From positions 73,594,001 to 73,658,000 of the forward strand of contig NC_088798.1 of the NCBI RefSeq assembly GCF_011386835.1: a DNA stretch of 64,000 nt. The letters are read 5' to 3'. The translations under genes were made by a program, and so were the position numbers. The notes under the pieces were generated by a model. It had not been told where the DNA came from and did not search any database. It saw only the letters and a program-made list of their open reading frames with translations. How positions within the stretch are numbered: position 1 is the stretch's first letter; each line of letters opens with the position of its first letter. Origin of the DNA: Chrysemys picta bellii. Its lineage: Eukaryota. This document shows positions 19,327 to 40,300 of the stretch, piece by piece.

Positions 19327-22300
19327 ATGGACGCTGGGCAGGTGAGTGCTGCTGGGGTTAGCTGAGGGACCCAGAGTGGGGAGGTCTGGGAGAGGCGGCT
19401 CCCTCATTGCACATTGTCCTGTTTCTGTCCCTTTTGTCCAGCTTTGACACCTGATCTGTTGCTTCCAGCTCCTCTTGGGCTGGTGGTGAGCGGGAGCCAG
19501 GTGCTCTCTGGAACTGGCTGGTGCACTAGGAGCCAGGGAACTGGCTTCACCCTGTGCTTCTCCTTCAGTTCCCTAGCAGTCTGCTCCTGGAAGTGCTGGG
19601 CCTGGGGCAGAAGCCCTTACCTCTCTATGGTGTGCTTTCTTCCAGGCCAAGCAGGAGGCATATGTGCGAGCAGCAGTGGGACTCCGACGCGCAGCAGGTA
19701 TAGTGCCCTGTGCAGCCAGCAGCAGGGGGAGTCTAGGGCATGAGTGTCTACAATTCATCAGGCCCCTTTGTGTAGTCTTGTCAGGGGATTGGCTCCTGCG
19801 TGGGAGTGGGGAGTGGTCTGGGAAGCCGATGACTGGTTCAAATCCAGCCCAGCCTGGTAGGCCCAGTTAAGCACCTAACTGCCCTTGAAATCAACGGGAG
19901 AGAAGCAGGTAAATCTCTCTGTGGAGCTGGACCCAAAAGCCAAGCCCATCCGCTGCTGCTGTGAAAGGAGCTGGGGTCTGTGTCCAGCTGGCATGGCCAG
20001 GCCCCCATGGTGACAATGGCAATAAGGCAGCTAGGCACGAAGAGCAGCCACAGGGAGATGCAGAGTTAGCTGGAGCGGGACATGATGAAGGGGGCACAGG
20101 GGGAGGAAGGAGATGGGCCTGGGGAGAAGTGGGCGAGCTGGCTCTGGGGGGCACTGCAGAATGAGGACACAACATCCCTTTGCTCTCTGAGCCACTAGTG
20201 CCTAAAGTGGAGCGAGAGTGGAGGCAGCAGGGTACTCGGGAGGCTGCACCCCACCTCTCCTCAGCCTGGGGCTCGGAGTGAAGGGCTGGCCAGGCTCAGG
20301 CTCCATGGGGGAGGTGCAGGAAGCTCAGGCCAGAACTTGGAAGCAGTTTTGTCAGTTCACAGCAAAGGGGAACTGCTGACAGGAGCGTCTGGTCCCCCAG
20401 CGCAACAGGAACCCGGAGACGGTTACACCCAGCATGCTGCAGCCAGCCGGGATCTCATTTCCTTTAGCAGCCAGTGTTCAGGCCTCTCCTCTGTGCCTGA
20501 GCCAGCAGCAAAGCCAGCTCATGTTTACACCACTGCAGGAAACCAGCTGGGCAGGGCCAGCAGCAGCAGGGCTCAGTGACCTTCCTCACCCCAGCCCTTC
20601 CCTGGCTGCAGGACCAGCCCGAGGAGAGGATGAGCTGAGATTAAACCCAAAGAGCTGCGGCTCCCCAGCGGGGACCAGGAGGAGGCCGATGCTCCCTGCG
20701 AAGGGGAATTGGGAAGGGGATGGAGGTCAGCCTGGGCTCAACAGGTGAAAGACTCATGGGCACATGTGCGCCAAAGTCCCAGTGCCTGGGGAATGGCAGG
20801 TTGGGTCAGGTCACTCTGCTCTCGCTCCTGTTTCCTGGCCCATTCCCATCTGGTGTGTGGCTTCATGTCCCTGCTGTCTAGGCCTTCCATGTGTGCCACA
20901 GGTGATGCTGCCAGGCCCAGGAGATCCAGTCTGCAGGTATTGTGTGGGGTGGCACATCCCAGTCCTCACTGCAGCTGGTTCCAGGGGAGTGGCCCCTGTG
21001 GACCAACTGGAGAGGATCAGGCCCCAGGGAGGAGGGTCTCCCATAGTTTATTTCTTGATCACATCCCTGATCCTGTGATCGTGCCCCTGGCCCCCCGGAC
21101 TGTGTGTAAATGGCCTGACCTGTCCCTTCACTTGGCGTTTCAGGCTCGGGGAAGCAGGAGAGTTTCCGGGTCGTGAATGAAGACTCCAGCCGGCTGATTT
21201 TCGTAGATAAGGCAGACAAGGACATTCAGGTAGGATTGGGTGGTGTCCGGGGCAGGGTCCTCACCCCAAGCTGGAGTGAGGAGGGAAGGTGCGGATGCTC
21301 ATGTAATGCCTGTGTCAGGAGTATGGCTGTATGCAGGGGCAGTGTTGGGCTGGCCCCTCCAGCCAGGCACAGGACGAAGCAACAGAGGCCTCACCTCAAG
21401 CAGCAAGAGTCATCCCACAGGGCACACCTGCTGTCTTACAAATCAGCCTTTGGGACTTGAGGGAATCCTGACCCATTGGGGTGGGGGGTGGGGGCTGAGT
21501 CCCAGGACTCTCTCACGGCCTGGCTTGGTGCAGCTCTCAGCCCCTCCCACGTAGCCCTCTCACTTAGCTCCCCTCAGACAGGGTCCGTCTCACCCGCAGC
21601 CCCACAGGAGCAAAGGGCAGCAGGTTCCTGCCTGCTCAGCCCCTGCCCTGGCAGGTAGGAATTGTGCCAAGGCCCCAGCTGTGGAACTGCTTCCCGCGGT
21701 GCAGTGCAACGCTGCCAACCCCTGGAACTTGGCCGCTACAATTCCTCCTGCACCCGGCCCGGGGGGATGAAATACAGCCCAGAGGTCCCTGTGGGATGGG
21801 AGAGCTCCGGGCTTGGGGGTGCTGGGGCTGGGTGAGAGGCAGGAAGGGCTAAGCGCTAACCCAGCTGCTGTGTCTTTCCAGGAGGGCTGCTTCACGTTCG
21901 ACGGCATCTTTAGTCTGGACACAGGGCAGGTACGGTGGGTTCTGCATGTCTGTGCTGGGAAGGGGAAAGGCCTGGGGCCTGCACCCCTCTCCTTAGACTC
22001 AGGGGCAGGCAGCACCCAGAGACTGATCTAGGAGCCAGACTGAGCCCTAGACTCCCCAAGCCCTGAGAACTGATCCATGTCTCTCACCAGAGCTCGGCCG
22101 TGTCCCCTGGATTATCCTGGCCCCCCAAACACGGGCGGCAAGGAATGGCTGCTAAGGTGCTTGTCACAACCCCCCTGATCAGCCTAAGGCCTCTGAGGGA
22201 ACCTTGAGATGCAGGGATAATGTGGAGCTTGGTCCAGTGCACTTGGAAATAGCCCAAGCAGCAGGGGTTCCCCTCCCCTTGGGACTAATCCCGAGCCCAG

Positions 22301-25300
22301 TCCCTGTGGGCATTTCACCATTGCTCCTGCCCCCACAGCGATGCTCTGTCCTTGGCATTCCCACTCTTACTCAAGCTGCACAGGGGTCTCCTATCCCTCT
22401 CCCCTGCTCCCAGCAGACGCCCCCTTTGGGGTCCCAGGCCTCCTTCAGGGGCTGTGCCATTCCTGGTCTGCTTCTCCAGGGCCCGACTGACCCAGGGCTT
22501 GGGGTGCTGAAAGCGTCCCAGCCCAGCTGGTAAATGGCCTGTAGTTTTGCTTGGCTGGGCACATTTCAATGGGGTCTCTACCTCTCCCCACCAGCCCCAG
22601 CCCCAAAGCCCTCAGCAGGGGCCAGCACCAGCAGTGGGGGTGGGGAAAGGAGGCTGTGGGGCTGCCTGCACTAGGAAGGCTGGGGGTCGGGGGCCCCGAG
22701 GTCAGTGCTTGGAGCAGAGCACCCTGGCCTGTGTTCGAGATCTGCCGCAGCTCCCCTGGGGTTGCTGTGTTCTGGGTTGCTCCCCCTGGCTCTCTCTGCA
22801 GGACGAGGTGTTCTCGGAGCTGGTGAGACCCCTGCTGGCCATGGTGCCCCTTGGCTACAGCGTGTCCCTGCTGCTGTTGGAGGCCCATCAGGCCGGGACC
22901 AAGCTGCAGCCTCAGGGCACTGGGCAGCACCACAGCATCATCCAACAGGTGAGTGCAGTGGGCTGGGCAGCCCAGAGGTTATTGCTGGGTCCTGTCTCCT
23001 TCTCACCAGGCTGGTTTAACTCTTTGGATGCTCTGGGCTGGGATGACCCACTCCACCCACTGGCATGAACCTTCCAACCCTTGTAGGCTGCCTGGGGCTT
23101 GGCACTGAACTGGGCAAACAGGAATATACATATGTGTGGTGTCCCGGGTCAGAGGGCAGCCAGGGGCACCATTTAGGTAGTTTGGCAGGGCAGATCTGGG
23201 CATCAGAGCAAGGCAGGAAGAGACGTTCTCCCCCTCCCCCTCTGGCTGCCCCAGTGGTTCCCTGCTCCATGGAGGTGGTAGCAGTTCTGATGCAGAGAGA
23301 AAGCCAGTGAGAGGGGCAGAAAGTGTGGGGTATGGGGAGGAGGTTCTATCATGGGGAAGGCACCGTCCCTGCTCCCCGCTTCCCAGGCCTGGAACTGTGC
23401 TGGCTCTGCAGTGCTCTGGCCACTGCTGCCTGGAAGCCGCTCAGCACCATTGCCTTCCCATTTCCTATCGCGTGGCAGACAGATGGAAGCAGTGGCATAG
23501 CCAGCACCAGCTTCCCCCAGCAGAGCAGAGTGACTGGGTAGCTCAGCCAGCCTGTGGCTCCCACAGAGTCACAGCAGGGGAAGGTGGCAGGGGGTGCTGG
23601 AGCCAGACAGGCGCCTGCAGCTCATGCATCATCCAAGAGAGAGGGAGAGAAAATGGGTCAGCGACTGGGAGAGGCAGTGAATGCGTGTCAGTGGGACCCT
23701 GGGACATGCCTGGCCTCCCATTGCCAGACCAATGGGGGTTGTTGCTACATGAGGCACTTCTCAATCTACTAACACTCTGTCACCTCCTAGCACAATAGAC
23801 TCATAGACTTTAAGGTCAGAAGGGACCATTATGATCATCTGGTCTGACCCCCTGCATGCTGCAGGCCATAAAACCGTCCCTACCCCTTCCCTGGACTCTG
23901 CTGTTGAAGTCCCCAATCCTGTTTTTAGTGACTGCAATCGGCAGAGACCCTCCTGCTAGAGATCCCTGCCCCATGCTGCGGAGGAAGGCGAAAAACCTCC
24001 AGAGGCTCAGCCAATATGCCCTGGAGGAAAATTCCTTCCCGACCCCAAATGTGGCGATCAGTAAGACCCCGAGCATATAGGCAAGAGTCTCCAGCCCGAC
24101 CCCGTTAGCCATTATACTATTTACCCACCATTGCTTGGCTTTCCTTGACTACTATGTTTTACCATTAAACCATTCCCTCCATAAACTTATCTAACTTTAT
24201 CTTAAAACCAGACAGGTCCGTCGCCCCCACCGTTTCCCTCGGTAGGCCGTTCCAATATTTCACCCCTCTGACGGTCAGAAACCTTCGTCTAATTTCAAGT
24301 CTGAACTTCCCCACGGCCAGTTTGTATCCATTCGTTCTGGTATCCACGTTAGTACTAAGCTGGAATAATTCTTCTCCCTCCCTTGTATTAATCCCTCTAA
24401 TATATTTAAAGATAGCAATCATATCCCCTCTCAGCCTTCGCTTTGTCAGACTAAACAACCCAAGCTCCTCTAGTCTCCTTTCGTACGACAGCTTTTCCAT
24501 TCCTCTGATCATCCTAGTGGCCCTTCTCTGCACCCGTTCCAGTTTGAGTTCATCTTTTTTAAACATGGGAGACCAGAACTGCACACAGTACTCCAAATGA
24601 GGTCTCACCAGCGCCTTGTACAACGGAAGCAGGACCTCCTTATCCCTACTAGATATACCTCGCCTAATGCATCCCAAGACAGCATTGGCTTTTTTCACCG
24701 CCACGTCACATTGTCGACTCATAGTCATCCTTCGGTCTACAAGAACCCCTAGGTCCTTCTCCTCTTCCGTTACTTCTAACCAATGCGTCCCCATCTTGTA
24801 ACTAAAATTGTTATTAGTCATCCCCAAATGCATCACCTTACACTTTTCACTATTAAATTTCATCTTATTTCTGATACTCCAATTCACAAGCTCATTCAAG
24901 TCTCCCTGCAGGATATCCCTGTCCTCCTCTGAATTTACAACGCCTCCCACCTTCGTATCATCTGCAAATTTTATCAGCCCACTCCTGCAATCGGTTCCGA
25001 GGTCAGTTATAAATAGATTAAATAAAATGGGTCCCAAAACCGAACCTTGAGGCACTCCACTAGTAACCTCCCTCCAACCCGACAGTTCACCCTTTAATAC
25101 AACCCGCTGCATTCTCCCCAGTAACCAATTCCTTATCCACTTCTGGATTTTCATATCAATCCCCATGTTTTTCAGTTTAACCAATAATTCCTCATGGGGT
25201 ACAGTATCAAACGCTTTACTGAAATCCAGGTATATTAGGTCCACCGCATTTCCCTTATCTAATAAATCCGTTACATTCTCAAAGAAGGAGATCAGATTCG

Positions 25301-28300
25301 TTTGGCACGATCTGCCCTTCGTAAAACCATGTTGTAATTTATCGCAATTGCCACTACCCTCCAGGTCCTCAACTAGTTTCTCTTTCAGAATTTTCTCTAA
25401 CACCTTGCACACTACAGATGTTAGACTAACAGGCCTGTAGTTACCCGGATCACTTTTTTTCCCTTTCTTGAAAAGAGGAACCACATTAGCTATTCTCCAG
25501 TCTAACGGGACCACCCCCGAGTTTACAGATTCATTAAATATTATCGCTAACGGGCCTGCTATTTCCCGCGCCAATTCCTTCAATATTCTCGGATGTAGAT
25601 CGTCCGGTCCTCCCGACTTAGCCCCATTAAGGCGTTCAAGTTTTGTTTCCACCTCGGATACGGTAATCCCCCATCCCGAATGCCCCTCTATAGTGGTGCT
25701 AGTATCCCTAATACCTTCATTGGCCTCATTAAACACCGATGCAAAATATTCATTAAGATATTGCGCCATGCCTAGATTGTCTTTAATCTCCTCTCCGGCA
25801 ATAGACTTCAGCGGTCCCACTTCTTCTTTCTTTGCTTTCTTCCTATTTATGTGGCTGTAAAACCTCTTACTATTGCTTTTAATTCCCCTCGCTAGGTCCA
25901 ACTCTACACGGCCTTTGGCCTTTCTCACTCTATCTCTACATTCTCTGACTTCACTTAGGTACATTTCCTTGCTGATCCCTCCCCTCTTCCACTCTTTATA
26001 TGCTTTCTGTTTTTTCCTAATCGCCCCTTTGAGTCGGTCGCTCATCCAGCTCGGTCTAAATCTCTTGCTTAGTAATCTTTTTCCCTTTTTTGGAATACAG
26101 GCCTCCGACAGCTCATGCATCTTTAACTTAAAGTAATCCCAGGCTTCTTCTGCTTTTAAATCCATTAATACGTTTGCCCAGTCCACTTCCCTTACCAGTC
26201 CCCTTAGTTTGTTAAAATTGGCCTTTTTAAAATTATAAACCCTAGTCTTTGATTTAATTCTGTTACTCCTTCCATGTATTTTAAACCGAATTAGCTCATG
26301 ATCACTGGAGCCCAAATTGTCCCCTACTACCACTTCCTCAACAAGGTCCTCACTACTTGCCAGAATCAAATCTAAAATGGCCTCCCCCCTCGTCGGTTCA
26401 GTTACCACTTGATGGAGGAATTGATCAGCAAGCACTTCTAGGAACATCTGAGCCCTGTTATTGCTACTAGCGTTTGTTCCCCAATCTATATCCGGGAAGT
26501 TAAAGTCCCCCATAATTACACAGTTTCTGTTAGTAATTACTTCTCTAAACACATTAAATAGTTCCTTATCCATATCCTGGGTCGATCCCGGCGGTCTATA
26601 GCACACTCCAAGCACTATCCCCGGAGAGGCTCTAGTAGTCCTATTACCCAGTGTGAGTATTGCCCAGACAGACTCTGTGTTATCTAATCCATCCACTATT
26701 ATTTCTTTACAGTTTATTTCACTATTGACATACAAGGCCACCCCCCCACCTTTACCTTTGTTCCGGTCTTTCCTAAACAGCGCGTACCCCTCCATACCTG
26801 TGTTCCAGTCTTGACTGCCATTCCACCACGTTTCCGTTATTCCTACGATATCCGGTTTCAGTTCCTGGACCAAGAGCTCCAATTCCTCCATTTTATTACC
26901 TAGGCTTCTGGCATTGGTGTATAAACACCCTAATGTATGTCGTTTAGCCCGTCTCCCATTAGCAGCACTATATGTTGCGGGCCTCCTTGCGTCCGTCCCC
27001 CCTGTCCTTCCTATGTCCAATCTCATCTCCCCGGCTATGTCTCCTCTCCTTTTACTCACCTTTTCCATACTGGAATCTGGCGTGGAGATTGTGCATCTCC
27101 CAACCGTCTCCCCAAACTTCCTAGTTTAAAGCTCTTTTGATTAGATGAGCCAGCCTCCCTCCCAGAAGTCTATTTCCTTCCCTACTCAGGTGAAGCCCAT
27201 CCCGCGAGAACAGGTGTCTGTCCCCGAAAGCCTCCCAGTGGCCATACATCCCAAAGCCCTCCTTATAGCACCACTCCCTTAGCCAACTATTTATTCTCAC
27301 AATCCTATCAGCCCTTTGCTGCCCTTCCCTCGGAACGGGCAGAATCCCACTAAAGATAATCTGAGCCTCTATCTCCTTGAGCGTCTTCCCCAGCCTGGCA
27401 TAATCTCCCTTGATCCTCTCTAACGAGAACCTAGCCGTGTCATTCGTTCCCACATGAAGGATTATCAAGGGGTTCTTACCTGCTCCTTTTAGGATCCTTT
27501 TCAACCGCAGGTCCACATCGCGTATCTTTGCGCCCGGGAGACAGCACACCCTTCTGTTCTCCGGGTCCGCCCTGGTCACAGGCCTGTCCAATCTCCTCAG
27601 TAAAGAGTCACCAATCACATACACCTGCCGTTGCCTGGCAACAGTGCGATCTAGTAATCTAGTCTCCGATCCCTCTAGTCCTGACCTGTGCCTGTTCCTA
27701 TCATCCCTTATGCTCCCCCTTATGCCTTCCTGAATCCTCCCGGGGCCCAGAATTGGTGCTGTCTCCATCAACTCCTCCCCTCTCTCTCTTGGACTAGCTG
27801 CTCTTCTCTTCTTCCTCACCCTCCCACCTTCAGTCGCCACCTGCTGCCCCTCCACCTCGCTATCCAAACACTCGAACCTATTCCTGAGTTCTATTCCCCC
27901 CTCACTGGCCCTTCTTTTCCTTGGCCTACTTCTCACAGTCACATGCTTCCACCTCCCATGTTCTCCCCCCTCCATTCCCCTCTCACTGTCCTCTACCTCT
28001 GCCTCTACCTCCGCCACAGGACATTCTCCTTCAGCCCCCCCTTGCCTTTCCTCCATCAGCTGCTCAAACCCCCGCCTAAACTCCACCAGGGTATCTACCT
28101 GCATCTGCAGCCCCTTAATCTTTTCCTCCAGTAACACTATCAGGCGACACTTCATACACACATACCTTAGTTCCAGGTCTCCTGCTAGGACCATATACAT
28201 ACCACAGCTCCCACATGTCGCCATCTGCATTCTGTCTGCTGCTGCTGCTTGGCTCATGGCTGCTGCGGTCCCTGCCCAAAACACCTGGGGGAATGGAGTA

Positions 28301-31300
28301 CAGAACACGCCGCGCCCTCCTGCCTCCCCGCTTACCTCCCCCTGCAAACTCCCTCTCAAACTCCCCTGTTAGCCGCCCTGTTTGCTGCCGCTGGGCGGCC
28401 GCTTTTATGGGCCCCTTGATCAGCCAAGCCCCGCCCCCTACTCAGGGCTCGGCGTCCTTCCCAGCACCCAGCCCCTGCCGGCCCCTACAAACAAACACAC
28501 AAGAACACACAAGAACAACAAGGACAGATGCAAATACAGGTACCTTCTCCTCCAATGAGAACTCCCTCTCAAACTCCCCTGTTAGCCGCCCTGTTTGTTT
28601 GCTGCCGCTGCTCGCAGCTGTACCGCTGCCTGGCTGGGCGGCCGCTTTTATGGGCCCCTTGATCAGCCAAGCCCCGCCCCCTACTCAGGGCTCGGCGTCC
28701 TTCCCAGCACCTAGCCCCTGCCGGCCCCTTCTCCTCCAATGAGAACTCCCTCTCAAACTCCCCTGTTAGCCGCCCTGTTTGTTTGCTGCCGCTGCTCGCA
28801 GCTGTCAATGTCTGGCCTCCCGCCTAGCTCAGCATGTCTCGGTCCCACATAGCATCGGCTCCACATGAGGATAAGAACCTATTAAAGCTGTTAACTGGAG
28901 GAGCTGCTCCTTTAGCTCGAACTGTAGTGGCTCATGCTTCTAGCTCTGACGGGTCAAACCCTGCTAACAACCCAAGCGAGGGGATTGGTGTGGGTAATTT
29001 GGGTGTAATCAAACGGCAGCGAATAACCACAACGAAGGATCCCGAAATAGACTGACATTTACATTTTACCATTCACAAAAATCCAAGGGCTTCCAGGTCC
29101 TAAGGGACTCCTAGCCACCACTAAATTTCCCCCGCACTCCCACTGAAATCTGAGCAGCCATTGGACACAGTGTCCCGGGGGTCAATTGGCAGCCAGGGAT
29201 CCATTGGCTATGGCATCTCAGGGGTGGGGGAGACAGCCCGGGGAGGCTGCTGCTCACGTGGCAGGGGGTGGCCCTGAGCTCTCAGCTCACCCATAAGCCC
29301 AATCCCGCCCTTCCATGAACAGATGCGACAGACCCTGAAATTGAGGGGAGCTCCCCCAGCTATCTGAAAGCAGGACAGATCCCAGCTTCAGAAGAAGCCC
29401 CCAGGCCACAAATTCTAGGGAGCTGGTGAGCAAAGCACAGGCCTCTGAGCAGTTCCACCCCCTCTCCAGGTGATAGAAACCTTCTTCCAGGAGCCCAAGC
29501 TCCCAGGGGATGGCAGGGACCATCTGCAAACTGTCAGCTTTGTCCAGGTAAGATGGAGTGTGGGAGATCCATCGCTGGTGGGCTGGCGTGTGCCCCAGGC
29601 TGGTGTGTGCCTCAGGCTGGCTGCCCATCCTCCAGCCTGGGCCATTGGGGAATGATTTTATAACTCTCATTAGAGCAGTATCTCCCATTGCCCGTGGTGG
29701 GGCCCTGGGGCTGCAATCTGTGCTGCCCGCTGGCTGGACTCTCACACCCCCTGGGCACTCTTTGCCATCACCTTCCCAGCTGGGGCACCTGTGAGTCCTG
29801 CCAGTCTGCAGGGCAGCCCCCCTCCCCCAATGCCTGAGTCTGAGCCCCAAATTGGGGGATGGGCGGAGCGGGGCAAATGTACTACAGGATCATGGGATTG
29901 CTGAGTGTGGGGAAGCTGGGATGTCCCTGGGGGCTCCTGCTCTGAGCAGCAGCTGGGGTGGCTTTTCCTTCCCTCTTTTTTCCCTCTGTTACCCATATGG
30001 CTCTGCCTTCCACTGCCCACCCTCACTGCCTGTGGGTAGCTTCCCCAAGGGGGTGGATTGCCCCCTGCTCTGCCCCACCCCTGCTGCTGTCAGTGAGACC
30101 TGTGCAGAGTGGGTGGGTGGGTGTGAGAGGCTGGAGCAGAATGGAAACAGTGTACACCTCATTTAAACTCACTTGGCATGGGTGTCAATGACCCCAACAA
30201 GGCCAGGATCAGGCCCTGTGTCTCTGAACAGCCTAACAAGTAACAAAACACACTGCGTGCAGAGTCTGCTCCTGTCAGTGGGCCCCACTGGTATAAAGAG
30301 GCTGGAAATTGGCTAGGAAAACCCCCAACATGAGGGGATGCTGTGGTGCCATAGAGCTGGCAGATGGGCATCGAGGGGGTGGGGCCGGATTCCCTTTTGC
30401 TCCACCCATTCTTGGGTGCTGGGAAGTCCCATGGGCCTGAGCCAGAGTCAGCTGGGGCAGAGCCTGCTCCCAGCAGCTCCAGAGCAAACCTCCACTGCCC
30501 AGGCTGCACCAAGCTCACCCTGGCCTCAGCCCACAGGTGGAGCCTGCGGGTTTTGCTGCTGCCCTCAGTAGGTTCTGAACCCCAATCTGTGGGTGCGGGT
30601 GCCAGCCTGGTGCATAGGAACCATCCCCTGCCTGGCCCTCCTGGGTCTGAATGCCCCCTGCCGATGCTGCCTCAAGACAGGTTTGTGCCTTGAATTTAAA
30701 CATCAGAAAGAGGAAACAAAGGAAAAGAAGCAAAGGAATGGAGGGGTGCAACCTGCTGTGCCCTGGAGCCAGCACCTGAGGCTGGGCCATGCCTCCAGAT
30801 GGGGCTGTGGAGTGGTTAGCTCTTTGGGTTTGCAATAATACTGTTATCCCTGCTAAACCCTGGACAACCAGCTGCCTAACAACCTTCCCTTCAGAACAGT
30901 TGGCATGGATCCCTGGTACATCAATACCAAAGAACCATGACAAATGTTTCCATTCAGAGAGGCCCCCGGGAATGTTCCTTTATGAAAAGGAGAGTGGGCA
31001 GGCTGCTTCTGTATTAACTTCCTCCCCCATCTCCTGGAGGAAGGAACTATGACATTGATCCTGCCATCGGATCCGTGCAGGTGAACCCTGGCCCTGCCTC
31101 TGTGCAGAGTCCTAGTCCTGCAATCGGATCTGCGTGGGCAGCACAGTCCAAGGCCGGGAGCTCAGACAGACAGCTGATTAACTGCCCATCATTCCCTGCC
31201 ATAATGTAAGGGAGGGGGCTTCTGGTGTTTTCCCATGGGAAGCAATCTCATTTCCCACTCTCACAGCCAGCAGAAGGGGAGAAATCCGGGACAGGCAGGA

Positions 31301-34300
31301 TGGAACCATATTTTATCAACCAAGGCTCACAGCGAAAACATAGCAGGGTCTCCTTGATGTTAGAGCGGGGGCAGCTTTACCAAGGTTGTTCTAATGAAAG
31401 AGAAGTGTAGCCAGGACTTCTGATAACAATACAGACCCCCACCACCCTCCAAGGGCCTGATCCAAAGTTCTGTGAATTACTAAATTCAATGGGGATGTGG
31501 GTCAGGCCCCAGATGGGTCCAGCTCTTCCGCTATCCCCCTGGCCACCCCACATTATTGGGATGCCACAGGTTTTCAGTGCATCTGCTGGAGTCACATGCA
31601 GTCCCCAGCCACAGTCCCACCCAGTTATACACATACACCCCAGCAGTGCTGCCCCCGGGCCCTCAGTGGCATTGTGATACTGGGCAGGAGCCAAGCTTTC
31701 CATTGCTGACCAAACTCTAGTTCCCGTCAATTTCCTTTCACATCACTGCATGTGCCCCATGGAGAGCCAGCCCGCCGGGAATGGGGAGGCTCCCAGTTCA
31801 GCTGCTTTATAGCTCACCACGTATAGTCTGTCATAGGGTTACCATACGTCCGGATTTTCTCAGACATGTCCGGCTTTTTGGGCCTCAAATCCCCATCCGG
31901 GAGGAAATCCCAAAAAGCGGACATGTCCAGGAAAATAGGGAGGGAGGGACCAGCAGTGCTCGGCCGGGGGCCGGAGCCGCTGGGGCCGGCAGTGCTCGGC
32001 CGGAGCCGCCAGGGCCGGCGGTGTGGGGCTGGGGCTGGGGTTGCGGGGCCAGAGCTGGCGGTGTGGGACCGGGGCCCGGGCCCGGCAGTGCTCGGCCGGG
32101 GGCGGCGGTGCGCTCGGCCGGAGCCGGCGGTGTGGGGCCCGGGGCCGGCTGTGTTCGGCTGGGGGCCGGGCTGGGGCCGGCCAGGGGTGCTCAGCCCAGG
32201 GTGCTGGGCTGGGGCCAGGCCAGGGCTGCTCGGCCAGGGGCTGCTCGGCCAGGGGCGGCGGTGCGGGGCCGGGGGCCAGAGCCGGAGCCGGCGGTGTGGG
32301 GCCCGGAGCCAGCGGTGTTCGGCCCGGGGCCGGCGGTGTTCGGCCGGGGGTCGGGCTAGGGCCAGCGGTGCGGAGCTGGGGGCTGGGGTGCTCGGCCGGG
32401 GCCGGAGCCAGCGGTGCGGGGCCCGGGGCGGGCTGTGTTCGGCTGGGGGCCGGGCTGGGGCCGGCCAGGGGTGCTCAGCCAGGGGTGCTGGGCCGGGGCC
32501 GGGCCGGGGGTGCTCGGCCGGGGGCCGGCGGTGCGGGGCCGGGTGGTGCTTGGCCGGGGCTGGGGTCGGGGTCGGGGGCCGGCGGTGCAGGGCCTGAGCC
32601 AAGCCGGGCAGGAGACGCCGGGGCCAGAGCCGCGCCTCCTTGCGCCCCCCCGCCCCAGCTTGCCTGCTGCTTCAGGCTTCCCGCGAATCAAATGTTTGCG
32701 GGAAGCAGGGGAGGGGAAGGGGCAGGGAGCGAAGCGTCCAGGGGAGGGGGCGGAGTTGGGGTGGGGCCGGGGGCGGGGCTGGGACCCGTGGAGTGTCCTC
32801 TTTTTGGACACTTAAAATATGGTAACCCTAGTCAGTCAAGGGTGAGATCCCTGGTCATAGAGCCGGTCCAAGGCCTCTGCACCAGCTCACTGAGCCATGT
32901 GGCTGGCTCCCTGCATCAGGGGAACGTCACCGATCAGGACTCCGGGTTTCCTATATGGAGCTAGACCATCGCAGGCATTCCTCATTGTTAATACAGCCCC
33001 ATGGCTCAGGAGCCCTGTGTGAAACCACCCAGCCAACGGTGTGTTCTCCCAGCCCCCCCTTGGGCTCCTGCCCCCTCTCATTGGGCACTCCCTACCCAGA
33101 CAGCCCAGTGCCAGCGCTGCTCCATGCCCAGGGTGGCCCCTGCTCAGTACTAATGCTGCTTGTTACAGCTTTGTGCAGATGGAAATGCCCGGGACCTGCT
33201 CAGCCCCAGAAATCAAGCCCTGCACGTGCTGGATGTCTCCCCGCTGGGTCTGTACGTACCTGAGCCCTCATTCCTGCTCCTCCCAGGGCATTAGCAAGAG
33301 GCTTCCAGTCCCCAGCACCAAGCTGGGCAATAGAGGGGCTAAGGCCACAGTGTGGGGATGGTTTCAGTGACATCTCTGAAAGCTACACGCTGCCCTTGGC
33401 CAGAGCACGTGGAGCTTGGGCTTGGGGTGCCATGGCAGAACTGTGGGTGTGTGGTCAGGACTAGAATAGGGAATAGTGCTCAGGACTGAGCATTGGAGGT
33501 GGGAGGGCAGGACCAGGAGAGCAGGCTATGGAGCAGGCCAGGACTGGGCACCTTTGGCAGAGCAGTTAAGAGCCCAAGACTGGACAGGGATGGGGGGACT
33601 GTGGCTCAGAATTGGGATGCACTGCAGAGCTGGGGGTGGGAGCGCAGGACAGCAGGGGGTGCACTGCAAAGCTGGGGATGGGAGTGCAGGAAAGTAGGGG
33701 TGCACTGCAGAGCTGGAAGGAACCCCACCCAGCACGCAGCCACTGTCCCTTCCTCACCCAGGGACTTTGAATCCTTCTGTTTCTAAAGCACTTTATTTAC
33801 TCAGGGACAAGCCTGCAGCTGGATAGAAGCCAGTGGAGAGGGGATGGGCTGGGGGCTGGCTGGAAGAGGCCCATTCCCAGCTGCTGGCAGCAGGGGGGAC
33901 ATGCCACGACCGTGCAGCCAGGGGCAGCTGCTTGGTAGGGCCAGCATTGTGCTGCTCTGCACTCACTCCCATTGATGGTGCCACCTGGCAAAGCCCGGCT
34001 CTGGGCAGGCAGAAAGCAGCTTGGCTGGTGGCCTCTGGAGAGGGGTATGGGGAGGCCTCCCGCTCCAGTACTACTGAGGCACTAAGGCTGCAGTGGGAGG
34101 AGGCTGGGCTCCATCCCCCAGTTGCCTGGGGCTGAGGGACAAGGTGCCCCAAAGGCCACTGAGCAGCTGCTCTGCTCTGGGAATGGCGCCCAAGCCTGGG
34201 GGCATGTGAGGGGGTGCCCCCTCCTTAGCCAGGGCAAAGGATGGGAGGAAAGGCCTGGGTGATGAGCTGCAAGAGGGAAGAGCATCTCTGATGTTGGAGA

Positions 34301-37300
34301 ATGTGTTGACTCCACAAGCCTGTGGCCCCAAGCTCTGCTCATCACGTGGTCTGGTAGGACCCAGGGTGATTGCAGCCAGGGGAAGACCTGGGAACCCCCC
34401 CGACAGCCTCTCAGTCTGCACAGGGACTGCCCCACCCCTGGGCTGGGGTGAGAGCTGATCCTGTGGGCCGGGGTTGGGGGTGATGGAGCTAGTCCCTCCA
34501 GAGCATGGGCCAAAGGAGGAAGGGGACGGGAGGAGATCCAGAGGGTTTGGTTGCTCTGCCCCATGCGGGGCTTGTGCTGGTTCCCCCCCTGTGCTCTTTC
34601 ACCCAGAGCCTCTTACTCCTGGCTCTCTGTTTCTAGGATGGTGGAAGAGGCAAGTGAAATTGTGGTGTCCAACTCTACAGCTGCCTACAGCTTCTATGTG
34701 AGGGGGCTGGAGGACAGTCCAGCACTGTCCCAAGGGTGTTCGCAGCAGTCCCAGGTGGAGCGGCAAGGAGCCACGTAAGGGTCAAGGCTAGGGGAGGGCA
34801 CCCCAGGGTGTGTGTACTGGTGGGGGGAGTGGCTCTGGGACTGCTACTGCAACTGTACATCTTCTGTAAGGGACCCTACATGCTCCTTGGCCATCTCCTA
34901 TCCACTTCCCAAGCAGGCCTGGCCCTGTTTATCTGGGTGAATTCCCAGAGCACAGGTGGGTTGGCTGGCTGCCATCTTTGAGAGCTCAGAGCCAGATCCC
35001 AAGGGCTCCCCAGCCAGAGCTTGAGGGGCTGTGTGTGCAGAAGAAGGGGACTGGAAATGGGACCAAAGGGGCTTTCCCAAAGCCCAGGAAGGGGAGAAGG
35101 TAGAGAAGCTGCTGGCAAGATCTGAGCACTAGCCCTCTGGCCCCTGGGAGCTGGATTCGGCCCTGGGGCAGTAGATCCTGCACCCCCCTAGACAGAGAAG
35201 CTCCAAGGCATCTCCATCGGAAGCAGCCACAAGCCATGCAGTGTCTTCATGCTGAGCTCCCCAGATGTGTACCTAGAGGGGAAATTGTGGTAACTTGCTC
35301 AAGTGCTGTCACAGCAGCAGGACTGACTCAGCTAGGTCCTGCTGCGTCAGCAGCTGAGCCACAACCCGACACCTTGGGAGCATGCCAGGGAAGGGGCTGT
35401 TCCGCTTGTCACGGCCCATTGCCCCCTGGTTCCTGGGAAGGTGAGCAGCTGCCTCCCGTGCATGCCCTCACCCTCCTGCCTTCCCCAGGTGCGGCAGCCT
35501 GTTCACCCTCACCATGGAGCAGGAGCTGGAGGGCTGCAGGCGCCAACGCTCGGCTGTCAGGATTTTGGAGTTCCCCCGAGGGGCCGGGCCCTGTGTGGAG
35601 CCGTACGTACAGGGGGGACATGCAGCTCCAAGCTGCATCTCCAGGGCACCAGCCCATGGCTTGTCCATGGTCAATGGGATCCCGTGGAACTCACTGCTGC
35701 AGGATAATGAGACCAATAGTTCCATACATTTGAAAAGAGGCTCAGGCTGGTATATGATCAGCAGCAGCAATGGCACCCAAGGCTTGCAGTCCCCCTGCTT
35801 CACTTTTATTTATGTGCATGGCCATAGCACTCAAAAGCCCTGGCCAGGATCAGGACCTCATTGTGCCATGTGCTCTACAGAGCCTGCCTGGTCACTAGCT
35901 GGGGGCAGGAAGGGATTCCCCCATGGGACCATGGTGCCCAAACAGCCAAGAATTTCACCCACCTTTCCTCAGCAGCACCTAGCACTGGAGACAGGCGCCC
36001 AGGCTGGGTGGGACTGGGCCATGTGCTGGGCCCTTGGCCTTATACTTTGATTCCCACCTTAATTAATAATAATAATGATTATAATGGTGTGCTGTTGTCT
36101 CTGTGCCTTCCCACCTGTGGGGCTCTCATACCCAGTGTCCTGTCTCTCTGCAGTCTCTCACCCCTGCTCCAAGCTCTGGCTCCCGGTGAGCTCCCGGACA
36201 ATGCAGGATTCCTCCCCTGGATTCTCAAGCGGATGCTAGAAGGAAACAACCTCACGTTCCTGCTGCTGTGTTTGACCCTGCCAGGTACTTGCCCCACTAC
36301 TGCCCATCATACCCACTCCGCCCCAGGGCAGGGATTGGTGTCTGGGGTCCATGCACCAGTGCTGAGTCTGCCCCCTGCTGGGCAGACCCTGGAACACCCA
36401 CGTTCAGTTAGCAGAATCGCACCATCTGCCAGCCAGACTCCCCGAGGACACAGCCAGGACATGCCTGCAGCTGGAGGTACAGGCCAGTCCAGATGCAGCA
36501 GATTTACAGCGAGCACCTGGCTCTGGGTGGAGCCAGAAGGAGCCATGCTGGCCTGTTCTATGATCCTACAGCTAGAGGCCAGTCAGGAAAGGAGAGAAGG
36601 GCATGGGATTAATGCTCCCCATCCCCTTGCACTGCTCTGGACAGAGGGGCCACCGCCTAGTGCTGCACTGCGTGGGGTGGGGCTAACCCCTGGCCCTAGG
36701 GCTGCTCTGAGTGGAGGGGATTAGTGCCAGCGGCTCCAAAGGCCAATGTGTTCGTCTGACTCTGCCATGCACTGAAAGATGCCCAGGGGTTTGCCTGGGT
36801 TGCTTCCTTTCTACCTCCCTCCACAGGCCTCCCTGTGTCTCTGCACTGCCCTTCCTGCACTCATCTAACTTTGGCTTTGGGGGCCCCATCATGCAGCTCC
36901 ACCCCTGTGGGTGCGAGAGTCTTCTCCTCTGCAGCAGACTCCCTGCAGCTCTGAGTTCATCTCAGCCCTTGGTAGGACAGAAGCACTGCCCCCAGTGACT
37001 GTCCCCCTTTCACTGTAATGTAGTAGCTGCAGAGGCCATCCAGGCAGCAAGGGTGAAAGACGCTCTGCAAAGTAAAGGCAGAGAGTTTGCTTCAGGGCTT
37101 CCCGTCGATCTGCTCGCCGGGCACCTGTCTGTGCCACGGCAGCTCGTCTCTGCCTTCTCGGGTGCACCTGACATCTTATCATGCCGGGTCCTGAGTGCGG
37201 GGAACTTTTGCATTCACATGCAGCAACCACAGAGCCCCCTCCCCCAACATCTGAGAGTCCTGTCCCGTGTTGGTCCCTGGGCCCCATTTCTTGGTGATCC

Positions 37301-40300
37301 CAGATAGATTCCCCAGTCCTTGGCCTGTGATCTCTCCAATCTTTTTCCCGGAAGTTGGCCATGGTCTGACATTCCCACTGGGAGGGCAGGAAGATTCCCT
37401 GCTGCTCAGAGCATGGTGCCAGCTTGTTAGCTGGGAGCCAGTGTCGGAAAGACTCCACAGAGTTCGCACCTGCTATTGCCTCCAGTCCCTGCATGGCCAG
37501 CCTGGGCACAGTGACTTCATGTTGGTCTGCAGGGATTGTTGCTGTAATTCAGCCCTCAGGCATGGCTAACTGGACTGATTATTCCAGCAAATTCCCCTCC
37601 CACCCATCCTCCCACTGCCCTCTTTCCTGTCTCCCTGGCCTCTGCTCCCTGTAGTCTCTAAGTGTATGACATTGACTCCTGCTCCAGCAGCCCTCATGGC
37701 TGAATACTCTCTGGTCTTGTAGATGCCTCTGGAGAAGAGATCCTGTCAGCCCTTTCGCTGGCTGAGCAGGTGAGGGGACTGGCCAAGAAGGTCTCACCAA
37801 CCCACTGGGATCCTGCTAAAGCAGCTTGGAGGCAGAGGGCAGAGATCCGAGAGCTGAGGGCCCAGCTCCTCTCCAGCAGCAGCCGCACAGTGCAGGAAAG
37901 TGTGATCAGCCAGCTGAGGAGAGTGCTGAGGGACCTGCAGGTGGGAGAAGCAGACACACTGCACATCTAGCTGTACACTGCTGGGACACTCGTGCCCGAG
38001 CTGGCTAGCCCAGAGCTGTGCGCCATTTTTCACAACACAACCAATGATTTAGATAATGGGATAGAGAGTACACTTATAAAGTTTGTGGACTATACCAAAC
38101 TGGGAGGGGTTGCAAGTGCTTTGGAGGATAGGATTAAACTTCAAAATAATCTGGACAAACTGGAGAAATGATCTGAAGTAAATAGGATGAAATTCACTAA
38201 GGACAAATGCAAAGTACTCCACTTAGGAACAATCAGCTGCACACACAAAATGGGAAATGATTGCCTAGGAAGGAGTACTGTGGAAAGGGATCTGGGGGTC
38301 ACAGTGGATCACAAGCTAAATATGAGTCAACAGTGCAACGCTGTTGCAAAAAAAGTGAACATCATTCTGGGATGTATTGGCAGGAGTGATGTAAGCAAGA
38401 CAGGAGAAGTAATTCTTCCGCTCTACTCTGCACTGATTAGACCCCAACTGGAGTATTGTGTCCAGTTCTGGGCACCACATTTCAGGAAAGATGTGGACAA
38501 ATTGGAGAAAGTCCAAAAGAGAACAACAAAAATGATTAAAGGTCCAGAAAACATGACCTATGTGGGAAGATTGAAAAAATTGGGTTTGTTTAGTCTGGAA
38601 AAGAGAAGACTGAGAGGGGCCATAACAGTTTTCCAGTACATAAAAGGTTGTTACAAGGAGGGAGAACAACTGTTCTCCTTAACTTCTGAGGATAGGGCAA
38701 GAAGCAATGGTCTTAAAATAAAGAAGCAAGGGAGGTTTAGGATGGACATTAGGAAAAACATCCTAACTGTCAGGGTGGTTAAGCACTGGAATAAACTGCC
38801 TAGGGAGGCTGTGGAATCTCTGTCATTGGAGGTTTTAAAGAGCAGGTTAAACACCAGTGCTTCAGCAGGGGCATCAGTTCGCAATGCATTCTGGGATGGA
38901 GGAACATCACCCATCCAGACAGCAACATAATAATGTTCTCATCTACCTTCTGGGAAGACAGCCTTGTGCCAGGCCAGGGGTGTGGGACTCTGGGCTGTCT
39001 AGGTTACTAGGTTCTAGGGGTGGATACAGCGTAGGTAGATGCACCATTCTGCAGGTAGCACAGTGTATGCCTAGTTATGTGTGTGTGCCACATGGCTGTA
39101 TGCATGCACAGTGCTGGATGCAGATGGGTTGGCATGGGTTACGTGGCTGTAACACTCTGGGCCTAAGTCTGAACAGAAATAAAGTTCTTGTCTTGTAAAC
39201 CTGAGTGTAAGCGTCCCCAGGTGTCCCTTGCATCTCCTCAGGGCAGAAGGAGTTAGCCAGAGACTGGGGAGAGTTTGTCTCCTGGAAGGGGTTAGGATCT
39301 CCAATGCTCCAGGGCTGTGCAGTCAGCAGATGCCGGAGGTGCTGTGGATGATGGGCTTACCTAGGACTTGGCTTGCTGCCCCCCATGGACAGCATGGTCC
39401 CTGTGGTGGTGACACACAGCACAATGAGGTCTCCCGGGCCTGTTTTCCAGGTGCTGAAGAACCAGAGCTGGGAGAAAAAGAAAGAGATGTCGGAGGCATT
39501 TGAAGGAAGTGGGAGCTGTCATCTTGAAGCCAAGGTGAATCCGGGATTCCAGCTGCTCATCACTGCCCTCCAGATGCAGAGCAGTGGCACAGGGACGTGA
39601 CACAGGACAAGGAACATCCTCTCCCCCTAGCAGCAGAGTCGTAGGAGCAGGCATAAGTGATACAGATAAAGTCAGAACCCATCCCCAAGCCAAGCAGAGA
39701 GCTAGCTTGTACAGTAACCATGCAGCTCCCTGCTGGGCCAGCTCCGGGTCTCCTCCCAGCACTTTATGCACCATCTTCAGAATCTGGGCCACACAGTCAG
39801 GGAAAGCCCACACTCAGCACTGTGTCAGAGGTTGGACAGCTGGGGCCCTGCACAGCTGGCCAGCTGCTGGCTGGGATGAGCTTGAGATGGCTGTGCTTCA
39901 TCGCTGCGGGGGACTGAGGATGGGGGCTGGGAAGCAGAGTCTGTGTGGGAGGGGCTGCAAGTGAGGGGGAATGCTCTGTCAGAGGTCCCCAGTGTTACAG
40001 CGGATCCTGGCCCCATTTAGCTTTAACAGGGCCCTGTCTGATGTGTCCCACACTACAGGGTCGAATCCCATTGTGGCTGGGCAGGGACGATCAGCTTACA
40101 AACCAGGCGCTGACAGATATGCTGAGAAGCCAAGAGTTCCTGGACAGAGGCAACTCTAAGCCAGATGGAGACGTCCCAGGTGTGGGAGCAATTTCAGGAC
40201 TGGGTCTGTCCTTGCCTAACCTGGGGGTGCATTGGCAGCTAACATGATCTGAGGGCTCAGATAACTTGTTAAATACCCAGAGAATGACCCCTCCTTGGGG

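What the first reader, a model, noticed from the sequence alone, without database searches (positions are those of the whole stretch)
19327..37940. Hidden multi-exon pseudokinesin: kinesin motor fold with every catalytic motif erased but the reading frame intact
Seen: eleven small GT-AG exons splice in phase into a domain that follows the kinesin motor order. Established: active kinesins need RxRP, the P-loop GQTGSGKT, switch I NxxSSRSH, switch II DLAGSE and the L12/alpha5 motif PYRxSKLT. Here, aligned from the flanking GY and FT anchors: RVRP becomes GLRR; GQTGSGKT becomes EAHQAGTK (22880-22903, invariant Lys lost); SSRSH becomes GATCG (exon 8/9 junction); DLAGSE becomes EFPRGA (35568-35585); L11/alpha4 is shortened; PYRDSKLT becomes PDNAGFLP. 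Structural positions survive (FTFDGIF, RDLLSP, LFTLTMEQ, LEGNNLT, EEILSAL). Inference: an ATPase-dead motor-like domain that is still under selection, perhaps a non-catalytic heterodimer partner or scaffold. This would be analogous to Vik1/Cik1, Smy1 or kinesin-11, but more degenerate than kinesin-11. I do not recognise it as a named gene and cannot check whether it has already been described.
Basis: partly seen in the sequence, partly recalled or inferred. Interest (0 to 1): 0.92.

Follow-up and report, generated by a model that had tools for sequence, protein, structure and literature searches.

The report
Conserved vertebrate dead-kinesin gene (E230025N22Rik orthologue)
This is a real, expressed turtle gene, conserved from sharks to mammals and never studied, whose protein keeps the shape of a kinesin motor but has lost every part needed to burn ATP, so it probably acts as a scaffold, not a motor.

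Summary
Eleven GT-AG exons (19327-37940, + strand) join in phase. Six more exons continue to a stop at 46838, giving a 660-aa protein. Spliced RNA contigs from four runs show four of the junctions exactly. The projected model is identical to an independent annotation in another turtle.

The gene is not hidden. It is painted-turtle LOC101953166, the orthologue of mouse E230025N22Rik and rat LOC502155, with relatives in birds, lizards, crocodilians, amphibians and a shark. I found no paper that characterises it.

The N-terminal domain matches Pfam Kinesin (44 bits, cut-off 29.3). Its predicted structure matches kinesin motors (Foldseek E 7e-21). The P-loop, switch I, switch II and PYRDSKLT motifs are gone, and about 20 residues of L11/alpha4 are missing, in every lineage.

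Selection is weak but real. dN/dS is 0.40 for the whole gene, 0.57 for the head and 0.29 for the tail. There are no indels in 1983 coding bases, where 11-15 are expected at the intron rate.

The conserved C-terminal coiled coil is predicted to form a parallel homodimer.

Most likely it is a dimeric non-motor scaffold with two dead heads. Its function and partners are unknown.

The parts
19327..19341 (+). Exon 1 (ATG, MDAGQ), donor GTGAGT
   Evidence: The same N-terminus appears in Pelusios, Pangshura, Gavialis, Lacerta, Hyla and Rhinatrema proteins. The exon is conserved in three turtle loci.
19646..19697 (+). Exon 2. It carries VGLRR at the position of the kinesin RxRP motif.
20720..20744 (+). 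Alternative first exon used by the RefSeq model (MEVSLGST), joined to exon 3
21144..21229 (+). Exon 3 (N-terminal beta strands of the head)
21882..21929 (+). Exon 4 (EGCFTFDGIFSLDTGQ, the conserved FxFD anchor)
22802..22948 (+). Exon 5. The P-loop remnant EAHQAGTK lies at 22880-22903, where Thr replaces the invariant Lys.
29470..29547 (+). Exon 6 (alpha2/beta4 region)
   Evidence: best splice scores of 26 candidates. (RefSeq protein maps here). (RNA loose end before exon 7 equals its 3' end).
33169..33251 (+). Exon 7 (ARDLLSP anchor), donor GTACGT
   Evidence: Junction 33251>34637 is present in three runs.
34637..34774 (+). Exon 8. Its end, together with the start of exon 9, gives GATCG at the position of switch I SSRSH.
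35489..35602 (+). Exon 9 (LFTLTMEQ). The switch II remnant EFPRGA lies at 35568-35585.
36154..36284 (+). Exon 10: shortened alpha4, PDNAGFLP (36194-36217) in place of PYRDSKLT, and LEGNNLT
37723..37940 (+). Exon 11: alpha6 (EEILSAL), the conserved neck KKVSPTHWDP (37785-37814), and the start of the neck coiled coil
39451..39534 (+). Exon 12 (neck coiled coil continues)
   Evidence: The RNA loose end after 37943 matches its start.
40059..40179 (+). Exon 13 (poorly conserved linker)
40518..40684 (+). Exon 14 (linker)
43015..43164 (+). Exon 15 (start of the conserved C-terminal coiled coil)
45481..45648 (+). Exon 16 (C-terminal coiled coil)
46656..46838 (+). Exon 17 (C-terminal coiled coil and stop codon)

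Best explanation
Shown: the locus is a transcribed, spliced, 17-exon protein-coding gene. It is painted-turtle LOC101953166, the orthologue of mouse E230025N22Rik, and it is conserved across jawed vertebrates.

Shown: its first ~330 residues are a diverged kinesin motor fold. In the turtle this domain has lost the P-loop lysine, switch I, switch II and the L12/alpha5 motif. In all lineages it also lacks about 20 residues of L11/alpha4, and its microtubule-facing segment carries a net negative charge.

Shown: after the head come a strongly conserved neck (K.VSPT.WDP), a short coiled coil, a variable linker and a conserved ~130-residue C-terminal coiled coil.

Inferred: the head cannot hydrolyse ATP and does not bind microtubules in the canonical way. 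The protein forms a parallel dimer through its coiled coils. It works as a non-motor scaffold or adaptor in which the two dead heads are kept as folded binding modules.
For: Gene and transcript:
- Four junctions appear in RNA contigs from three studies, including a 2.4-kb spliced contig.
- Projecting the model onto Pangshura tecta gives exactly its annotated 660-aa protein.

Kinesin origin:
- PF00225 scores 44.2 bits for the turtle, 94.5 for the shark and 88.5 for a caecilian.
- The family profile against PDB sequences returned only kinesin motor domains among the 60 listed hits, best E 2.9e-24.
- The AF2 model has pLDDT 77 and pTM 0.78. It matches kinesin motors at Foldseek E 7e-21 to 1e-17 with TM 0.62-0.76.

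Loss of motifs:
- See the alignment and motif table.
- The switch II-to-alpha5 segment is 31-47 residues with net charge -1 to -7 in the family. In KIF3B/C it is 66 residues with net charge +2.

Selection:
- All 17 exons have equal length and conserved GT-AG sites in three other turtles.
- There are 0 gap events in 1983 bp, against 11-15 expected from intron rates.
- Exon divergence is 5.1-5.5% and intron divergence 7.4-10%.
- dN/dS is 0.40 (0.29-0.55) overall, 0.57 (0.38-0.94) for the head and 0.29 (0.19-0.43) for the C-terminal half.

Dimer:
- The C-terminal domain modelled as two copies scored ipSAE 0.47, against 0.01 for the best of 3 controls.
- That mark was reached by 21 of 30 solved one-chain pairs and 0 of 23 solved single chains.
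- On eukaryotes it was reached by 17 of 29 pairs, but only 1 of 7 with no older solved relative.
- The runs agree in at least 80% of contacts, and partner pLDDT is at least 72.
- The contacts are in register (566-566, 562-562), meaning a parallel coiled coil.
Against: - No biochemical measurement exists. Loss of ATPase activity and of microtubule binding is inferred from sequence only.
- Constraint on the head is weak. Its dN/dS confidence interval nearly reaches 1. Mammals have deleted the P-loop region and score below the Pfam cut-off. Hares were reported with dN/dS above 1 for this gene (PMC6065068). The head could therefore be partly vestigial.
- Coiled-coil homodimers are easy for structure predictors to propose, and the test is poorly calibrated for eukaryotic proteins without solved relatives.
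- No binding partner, tissue or phenotype is known.
Confidence: 0.6

Rival explanations
1. Vestigial head. The function lies in the neck and the C-terminal coiled coil. The kinesin-fold domain is a slowly eroding remnant, kept in frame only because it sits upstream of the functional part.
For: - dN/dS is 0.57 in the head and 0.29 in the C-terminal half.
- Turtle-mammal identity is 30-39% in the head and 44-51% in the C-terminal domain.
- Mammals have deleted the P-loop stretch and parts of the switch I region. Some rodent models start after the first ~60 head residues.
- Pfam score falls steadily from shark (94.5 bits) to mammals (20.5 bits or less).
Against: - The head has stayed in frame, without indels, in four turtle lineages.
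- Its hydrophobic core positions are near-invariant from amphibians to mammals.
- It still folds confidently as a kinesin core in AF2.
- A useless 330-residue domain would be expected to be lost by exon skipping or a new start codon over 450 million years.
Confidence: 0.2
2. Non-catalytic partner or regulator of an active kinesin. It would pair with a catalytic kinesin through its neck coiled coil, or dock its dead head on a motor or a microtubule, as Vik1 and Cik1 do with Kar3.
For: - The neck-linker-like segment and the following helix are among the most conserved parts. W312, D313, K305, P309 and R322 are invariant or nearly so.
- The overall layout is that of an N-terminal-motor kinesin.
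- There is precedent in Kar3-Vik1/Cik1 (PMC4338441 and PMC3384419, listed).
Against: - No candidate partner was identified or tested.
- The only interaction test supports self-association of the C-terminal coiled coil.
- The microtubule-facing segment is truncated and acidic in all lineages.
Confidence: 0.15
3. Decaying pseudogene of a kinesin whose open frame is a matter of chance.
For: All catalytic motifs are lost. No exon matches PF00225 on its own.
Against: - Orthologues with open frames run from shark to mammals.
- There are no indels in 1983 bp, against 11-15 expected per comparison.
- dN/dS is significantly below 1.
- Splice sites are conserved.
- Spliced RNA is present.
Confidence: 0.01
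4. Still an active ATPase or motor that uses non-canonical residues.
For: The fold is retained. The shark and caecilian proteins keep G-x4-G-K and D-L-x-G-E.
Against: - In the turtle the P-loop Lys position is Thr, and the switch I serines and arginine are absent.
- The switch II Asp and Gly positions are Glu and Arg.
- Even the shark and caecilian lack the P-loop Ser/Thr and all of switch I.
- L11/alpha4 is truncated everywhere.
Confidence: 0.02

Closest known systems
Mouse E230025N22Rik / rat LOC502155 and the many vertebrate 'uncharacterized protein LOC...' entries
   Same: Orthologues. Similarity runs the full length, with the same head-neck-linker-coiled-coil layout and the same C-terminal motif (...LQVF.AYRGL..EQ...LE.RYRKLL...LQDAI.LS..NQ.L).
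   Different: Mammalian heads are more eroded. The P-loop stretch is deleted and the Pfam Kinesin score is below the cut-off. None has a described function in the papers I could search.
Vik1 and Cik1 of budding yeast (non-catalytic motor homology domains paired with Kar3)
   Same: A kinesin-fold domain without a working nucleotide site, attached to a coiled coil and retained by selection (PMC4338441 and PMC3384419, listed; details from my own knowledge).
   Different: Their motor-like domain is C-terminal and they heterodimerise with a kinesin-14. They bind microtubules. Here the head is N-terminal and is followed by a neck-linker-like segment. The sequence is still recognisably a kinesin by Pfam. 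The microtubule-facing segment is truncated and acidic. No partner is known.
Kinesin-11 (KIF26A/KIF26B, C. elegans VAB-8)
   Same: Animal kinesin-superfamily members regarded as ATPase-deficient, with non-motor signalling or scaffold roles (from my own knowledge, not tested here).
   Different: Those are much larger proteins that keep microtubule binding. This family is 450-730 aa and lacks L11 and half of alpha4. No KIF26 relationship appeared in any search here.
Costal2 / KIF7 (kinesin-4 relatives acting as scaffolds in Hedgehog signalling)
   Same: A diverged N-terminal kinesin head plus long coiled coils used as a scaffold. KIF4 is the best PDB sequence hit of the family profile. Costa and KIF7 clusters appear as weak language-model neighbours of the C-terminal domain (scores 0.83 and 0.82, leads only).
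   Different: KIF7 keeps its nucleotide-binding motifs and binds microtubule tips (my own knowledge). Membership of kinesin-4 is not established. The shark head hits KIF1A best, and the caecilian head hits kinesin-8 and OSM-3 best.

Membership tests
Kinesin superfamily (Pfam PF00225 motor domain) | Significant profile match to the kinesin motor domain | tested here: met
   The window's protein scores 44.2 bits, E 1.6e-11, against a cut-off of 29.3. The family profile against PDB sequences returns only kinesin motor domains among the 60 listed hits, best E 2.9e-24.
Kinesin superfamily (Pfam PF00225 motor domain) | Kinesin motor fold | tested here: met
   The AF2 model has pLDDT 77 and pTM 0.78. 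Foldseek matches KIF13B, KIF15, kinesin-1, Eg5, CENP-E and others at E 7e-21 to 1e-17, TM 0.62-0.76.
Kinesin superfamily (Pfam PF00225 motor domain) | P-loop GxxxxGK[ST] | tested here: not met
   EAHQAGTK in the turtle. GTYVSGKN in the shark and GSQGSGKD in a caecilian keep G-x4-G-K but not the Ser/Thr. The stretch is deleted in mammals.
Kinesin superfamily (Pfam PF00225 motor domain) | Switch I NxxSSRSH | tested here: not met
   GATCG in the turtle. No SSRSH is present in any family member aligned, shark included.
Kinesin superfamily (Pfam PF00225 motor domain) | Switch II DxxGxE | tested here: not met
   EFPRGA in the turtle. DLTGE is retained in the shark and one caecilian only.
Kinesin superfamily (Pfam PF00225 motor domain) | Microtubule-binding L11-alpha4-L12-alpha5 element with PYRxSKLT | tested here: not met
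   The segment is 31-47 residues with net charge -1 to -7. In KIF3B/C it is 66 residues with net charge +2. PYRDSKLT is replaced by PDNAGFLP.
Kinesin superfamily (Pfam PF00225 motor domain) | ATPase and microtubule-based motility | not testable with these tools
   Needs recombinant protein.
E230025N22Rik orthologue group | Full-length similarity including the conserved C-terminal coiled-coil domain | tested here: met
   Turtle against mammal gives 44-51% identity over the C-terminal ~140 residues and 30-39% over the head. The chain turtle > mole > more than 200 mammalian proteins comes.
E230025N22Rik orthologue group | Conserved gene neighbourhood (between CD14 and SLC35A4) | tested here: inconclusive
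   The window has a CD14/TLR2-like LRR gene upstream and an SLC35A4-like transporter downstream. Gopherus also has the LRR gene beside it. The mouse arrangement is from my memory only.
Vik1/Cik1-type motor homology domain proteins | C-terminal motor-like domain after a coiled coil, heterodimer with a catalytic kinesin-14 | tested here: not met
   The head is N-terminal and is followed by the neck and coiled coil. Heterodimerisation was not tested.
A specific kinesin family of origin (kinesin-1 to -14) | Consistent best match or clade with one family | tested here: inconclusive
   The best PDB sequence hit differs by query: KIF4 for the profile, KIF1A for the shark, kinesin-8 and OSM-3 for the caecilian. 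Automatic names range over KIF3A, KIF17, KIF4A, klp-20 and CENP-E.

The most novel reading that the evidence does not exclude
Vertebrates, mouse included, may carry an unrecognised extra member of the kinesin superfamily. It would be an at least 450-million-year-old pseudokinesin whose dead heads still dock on a motor or on the microtubule lattice, acting as a brake, anchor or regulator of an active kinesin. That would make it a vertebrate counterpart of yeast Vik1/Cik1, missed by kinesin catalogues because the mammalian copies fall below profile detection.
Probability: 0.2. Interest if true: 0.85.

Novelty: new member of a known kind. Interest (0 to 1): 0.65.

Why it matters
From my own knowledge, kinesin inventories of vertebrates list about 45 KIF genes and are treated as complete.

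This gene is a further kinesin-derived lineage, present from sharks to mammals. It has been catalytically dead since before those groups split, and yet it is still kept in frame.

In mammals its kinesin origin is invisible to Pfam, with scores below the cut-off. The reptile, amphibian and shark orthologues are what reveal the nature of the orphan mouse gene E230025N22Rik.

It offers a natural case of a motor fold put to non-motor use in animals. It is also a tractable target, with knock-outs possible in mouse or Xenopus, for asking what a dead kinesin head is good for.

Tried and rejected
- Exon-by-exon detection failed. A six-frame PF00225 scan of the whole genome gave no hit inside the window. 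A small HMM built from three of this genome's own kinesins found no significant single exon. The homology shows only in the spliced product.
- The family of origin could not be settled. PDB sequence rankings disagree between queries. Searching this genome with the shark head hit only the three single-exon kinesin genes. I did not build a superfamily tree, because I could not retrieve a balanced set of kinesin sequences.
- The C-terminal domain has no significant PDB sequence relative (best E 0.2) and no Pfam family. Language-model neighbours (costa, KIF7) score under 0.9 and are leads only.
- Genomic loci for the Pelodiscus and Chelonoidis orthologues were not on record, so dN/dS rests on four turtles.
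- Maximum-likelihood pairwise dN/dS timed out. The values given are NG86 with a bootstrap.
- Earlier notes of this scan held nothing for this place.
- Whether humans keep an intact copy was not determined. No ape protein appeared among the 120 listed of 215 hits, which proves nothing.
- Teleost orthologues were not seen. The word-based search cannot show absence.
- The pseudogene reading and the active-motor reading were considered and rejected (see the rival explanations).

Full report
**1. The observation**

I rebuilt the gene from the raw sequence.
- An ATG at 19327 opens a 15-base exon with a GTGAGT donor.
- Ten further exons follow on the + strand. Each is bounded by AG and GT, and their phases chain without a stop into 370 residues.
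- Exon 6 (29470-29547) was chosen from 26 phase-compatible candidates in a 10-kb intron. It had the best acceptor and donor scores.
- No exon alone is recognisable as kinesin. A six-frame Pfam scan of the whole genome found 127 kinesin exon matches elsewhere but none in this window. A small HMM found nothing significant exon by exon.
- The spliced product aligns collinearly with this genome's KIF3C over 323 residues (22% identity, E 3.6e-10).

**2. It is an annotated gene**

- A search of 1.8 billion representative proteins with exon 11 alone found 31 relatives, several with the match at residue ~300 of 550-730 aa proteins.
- One of the family members, XP_023962892.2 (Chrysemys picta bellii LOC101953166, 'uncharacterized protein', 646 aa), maps to the window at 100% identity.
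- Exact mapping adds six exons: 39451-39534, 40059-40179, 40518-40684, 43015-43164, 45481-45648 and 46656-46838.
- RefSeq uses another first exon at 20720-20744.
- The MDAGQ start is shared by Pelusios, Gavialis, Lacerta, Hyla and Rhinatrema proteins.
- Projecting the 17 exons onto the Pangshura tecta genome reproduces its annotated 660-aa protein exactly.

**3. It is transcribed and spliced as modelled**

- Contigs from four runs in three studies carry junctions 33251>34637, 34774>35489, 35602>36154 and 36284>37723.
- Their loose ends equal the end of exon 6 and the start of exon 12.
- One 2.4-kb contig spans exons 8-11 and continues downstream.
- The runs are only guessed to be RNA, but spliced contigs can only come from RNA.

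**4. Distribution**

- Relatives are annotated in turtles, crocodilians, lizards, birds (chicken LOC107054473), frogs, axolotl, caecilians and a catshark. More than 200 mammalian proteins also match, including rat LOC502155 and 'Riken cDNA E230025N22 gene'.
- Most entries are named 'uncharacterized protein'. The automatic names disagree with one another: KIF3A, KIF17, KIF4A, klp-20, CENP-E, plectin.
- Full-text searches found the mouse symbol only in gene lists. One study noted dN/dS above 1 in hares (PMC6065068).
- 'Pseudokinesin' and related terms retrieved nothing about this gene.

**5. Kinesin origin and what has been lost**

Pfam Kinesin scores by lineage (cut-off 29.3):

| Lineage | Bits |
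|---|---|
| Shark | 94.5 |
| Caecilian | 88.5 |
| Frog | 65 |
| Axolotl | 61 |
| Turtles | 42-44 |
| Lizard | 27 |
| Owl | 19.5 |
| Mammals | at most 20.5 |

- A profile of 41 family heads matched 139 PDB sequences at E up to 0.001. All 60 listed are kinesin motor domains, with KIF4 best at 2.9e-24.
- An AlphaFold2 model of residues 1-350 (pLDDT 77, pTM 0.78) matches kinesin motor structures at Foldseek E 7e-21 to 1e-17, TM 0.62-0.76. It also matches N-terminal-motor kinesins in Swiss-Prot models.

Motifs, from alignment with KIF3B/C:

| Canonical motif | Turtle sequence |
|---|---|
| RCRP | GLRR |
| GQTGTGKT | EAHQAGTK |
| SSRSH | GATCG |
| DLAGSE | EFPRGA |
| PYRDSKLT | PDNAGFLP |

- The stretch from switch II to alpha5 is 45 residues in the turtle instead of 66.
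- The same ~20-residue deletion and the loss of switch I are present in every member, shark included.
- That segment carries net charge -1 to -7 in the family, against +2 in KIF3B/C.
- The shark and caecilians still keep G-x4-G-K (without the Ser/Thr) and, for the shark and one caecilian, D-L-T-G-E. Mammals have deleted the P-loop stretch.
- The protein was therefore already catalytically crippled in the common ancestor of jawed vertebrates and has eroded further since.

**6. Selection**

- I fetched the orthologous loci of Pangshura, Gopherus and Eretmochelys.
- All 17 exons are present in order, each with identical length, conserved AG/GT sites, no internal stop and the same stop position.
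- Introns differ by 7.4-10% with 5.8-7.6 gap events per kb. Exons differ by 5.1-5.5% with no gap event, where 11-15 would be expected per comparison.

dN/dS by NG86 over two phylogenetically independent pairs:

| Region | dN/dS | Bootstrap 95% interval |
|---|---|---|
| Whole gene | 0.40 | 0.29-0.55 |
| Head (codons 1-330) | 0.57 | 0.38-0.94 |
| C-terminal half | 0.29 | 0.19-0.43 |

This is weak but real purifying selection. It is stronger on the tail than on the head.

**7. Architecture and likely mode of action**

- The most conserved positions from amphibians to mammals are core hydrophobic positions of the head and the neck segment K.V.P..WDP with the following helix.
- Turtle-mammal identity is 44-51% in the C-terminal ~140 residues and 30-39% in the head.
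- The C-terminal domain has no Pfam or PDB sequence relative.
- Folded as two copies it scored ipSAE 0.47, against 0.01 for the best of three controls. That mark was reached by 21 of 30 solved one-chain pairs and 0 of 23 solved single chains. On eukaryotes it was reached by 17 of 29, but only 1 of 7 without older solved relatives. The runs agree in at least 80% of contacts and pLDDT is at least 72. The contacts are in register, which indicates a parallel coiled coil. This supports dimerisation but does not show it.
- I therefore read the protein as a parallel dimer with two N-terminal dead heads. The heads cannot hydrolyse ATP and are unlikely to bind microtubules canonically, so it would serve as a scaffold or adaptor.
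- The steps from 'motifs lost' to 'no ATPase' and 'no microtubule binding' are inference.
- The rivals are a vestigial head, or a Vik1-like partner of an active kinesin.

**8. Comparison and novelty**

- The protein works like the known non-catalytic kinesin-fold proteins (Vik1/Cik1, and in looser ways KIF26 and Costal2/KIF7). It is not a member of any of those families.
- Its parent kinesin family is unresolved.
- The gene is known to databases, and in some species it is auto-labelled 'Kinesin motor domain-containing protein'.
- I found no description of it as a conserved dead kinesin, nor of the kinesin origin of mouse E230025N22Rik.
- I rate it a new member of a known kind. Interest is moderate to high for motor-protein biology.

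Noticed in passing
window 24165-28359 (- strand), inside intron 5: A CR1-like LINE with two long uninterrupted ORFs. One is 967 aa with endonuclease and reverse-transcriptase features, the other 412 aa. It looks like a young, possibly intact element.
   Followed up: no
window 38187-38930 (+ strand), inside intron 11: A 247-aa ORF resembling the C-terminal part of the same CR1 reverse transcriptase. It is a truncated LINE copy in sense orientation within the gene.
   Followed up: no
window 22948 > 34637: One low-depth RNA contig (run X3, depth 4 against 12-15 for the main form) joins exon 5 directly to exon 8. It skips exons 6 and 7 (161 bases), which breaks the frame. This is a minor and probably unproductive isoform.
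   Followed up: partly
window 34844-35125, 35485-35697, 36809-37093: Run X1 also holds unspliced intronic contigs, one of which runs through the exon 9 donor. They are either pre-mRNA or intron retention, or DNA carry-over in that library.
   Followed up: no
window 6052-7506 (+ strand): A single-exon 484-aa leucine-rich-repeat protein with a C-terminal transmembrane helix and a very short tail. Its best PDB sequence hits are the TLR2 ectodomain (1e-56) and CD14 (5.5e-26). It is probably the membrane-anchored CD14 of sauropsids. Gopherus has the same neighbour.
   Followed up: partly
window 51654-52631 (- strand): A single-exon 325-aa nucleotide-sugar transporter (PF04142, E 9.7e-39). It resembles SLC35A4 and converges on the 3' end of the dead-kinesin gene.
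   Followed up: partly
window 32116-32533 (intron 6) and 8000-10700: A 99-bp GC-rich tandem repeat (4.4 copies, 66% matches) sits in a 68% GC block of intron 6. A separate 62% GC, CpG-island-like block lies between the LRR gene and the dead-kinesin gene.
   Followed up: no
orthologue records (P0047, P0055, P0121, P0214 and others): Automatic names in public records are inconsistent or wrong for this family: KIF3A, KIF17, KIF4A, klp-20, CENP-E, plectin, PTB domain-containing engulfment adapter, CCDC88B-like. One Mauremys model (1057 aa) fuses the neighbouring LRR gene to it.
   Followed up: no
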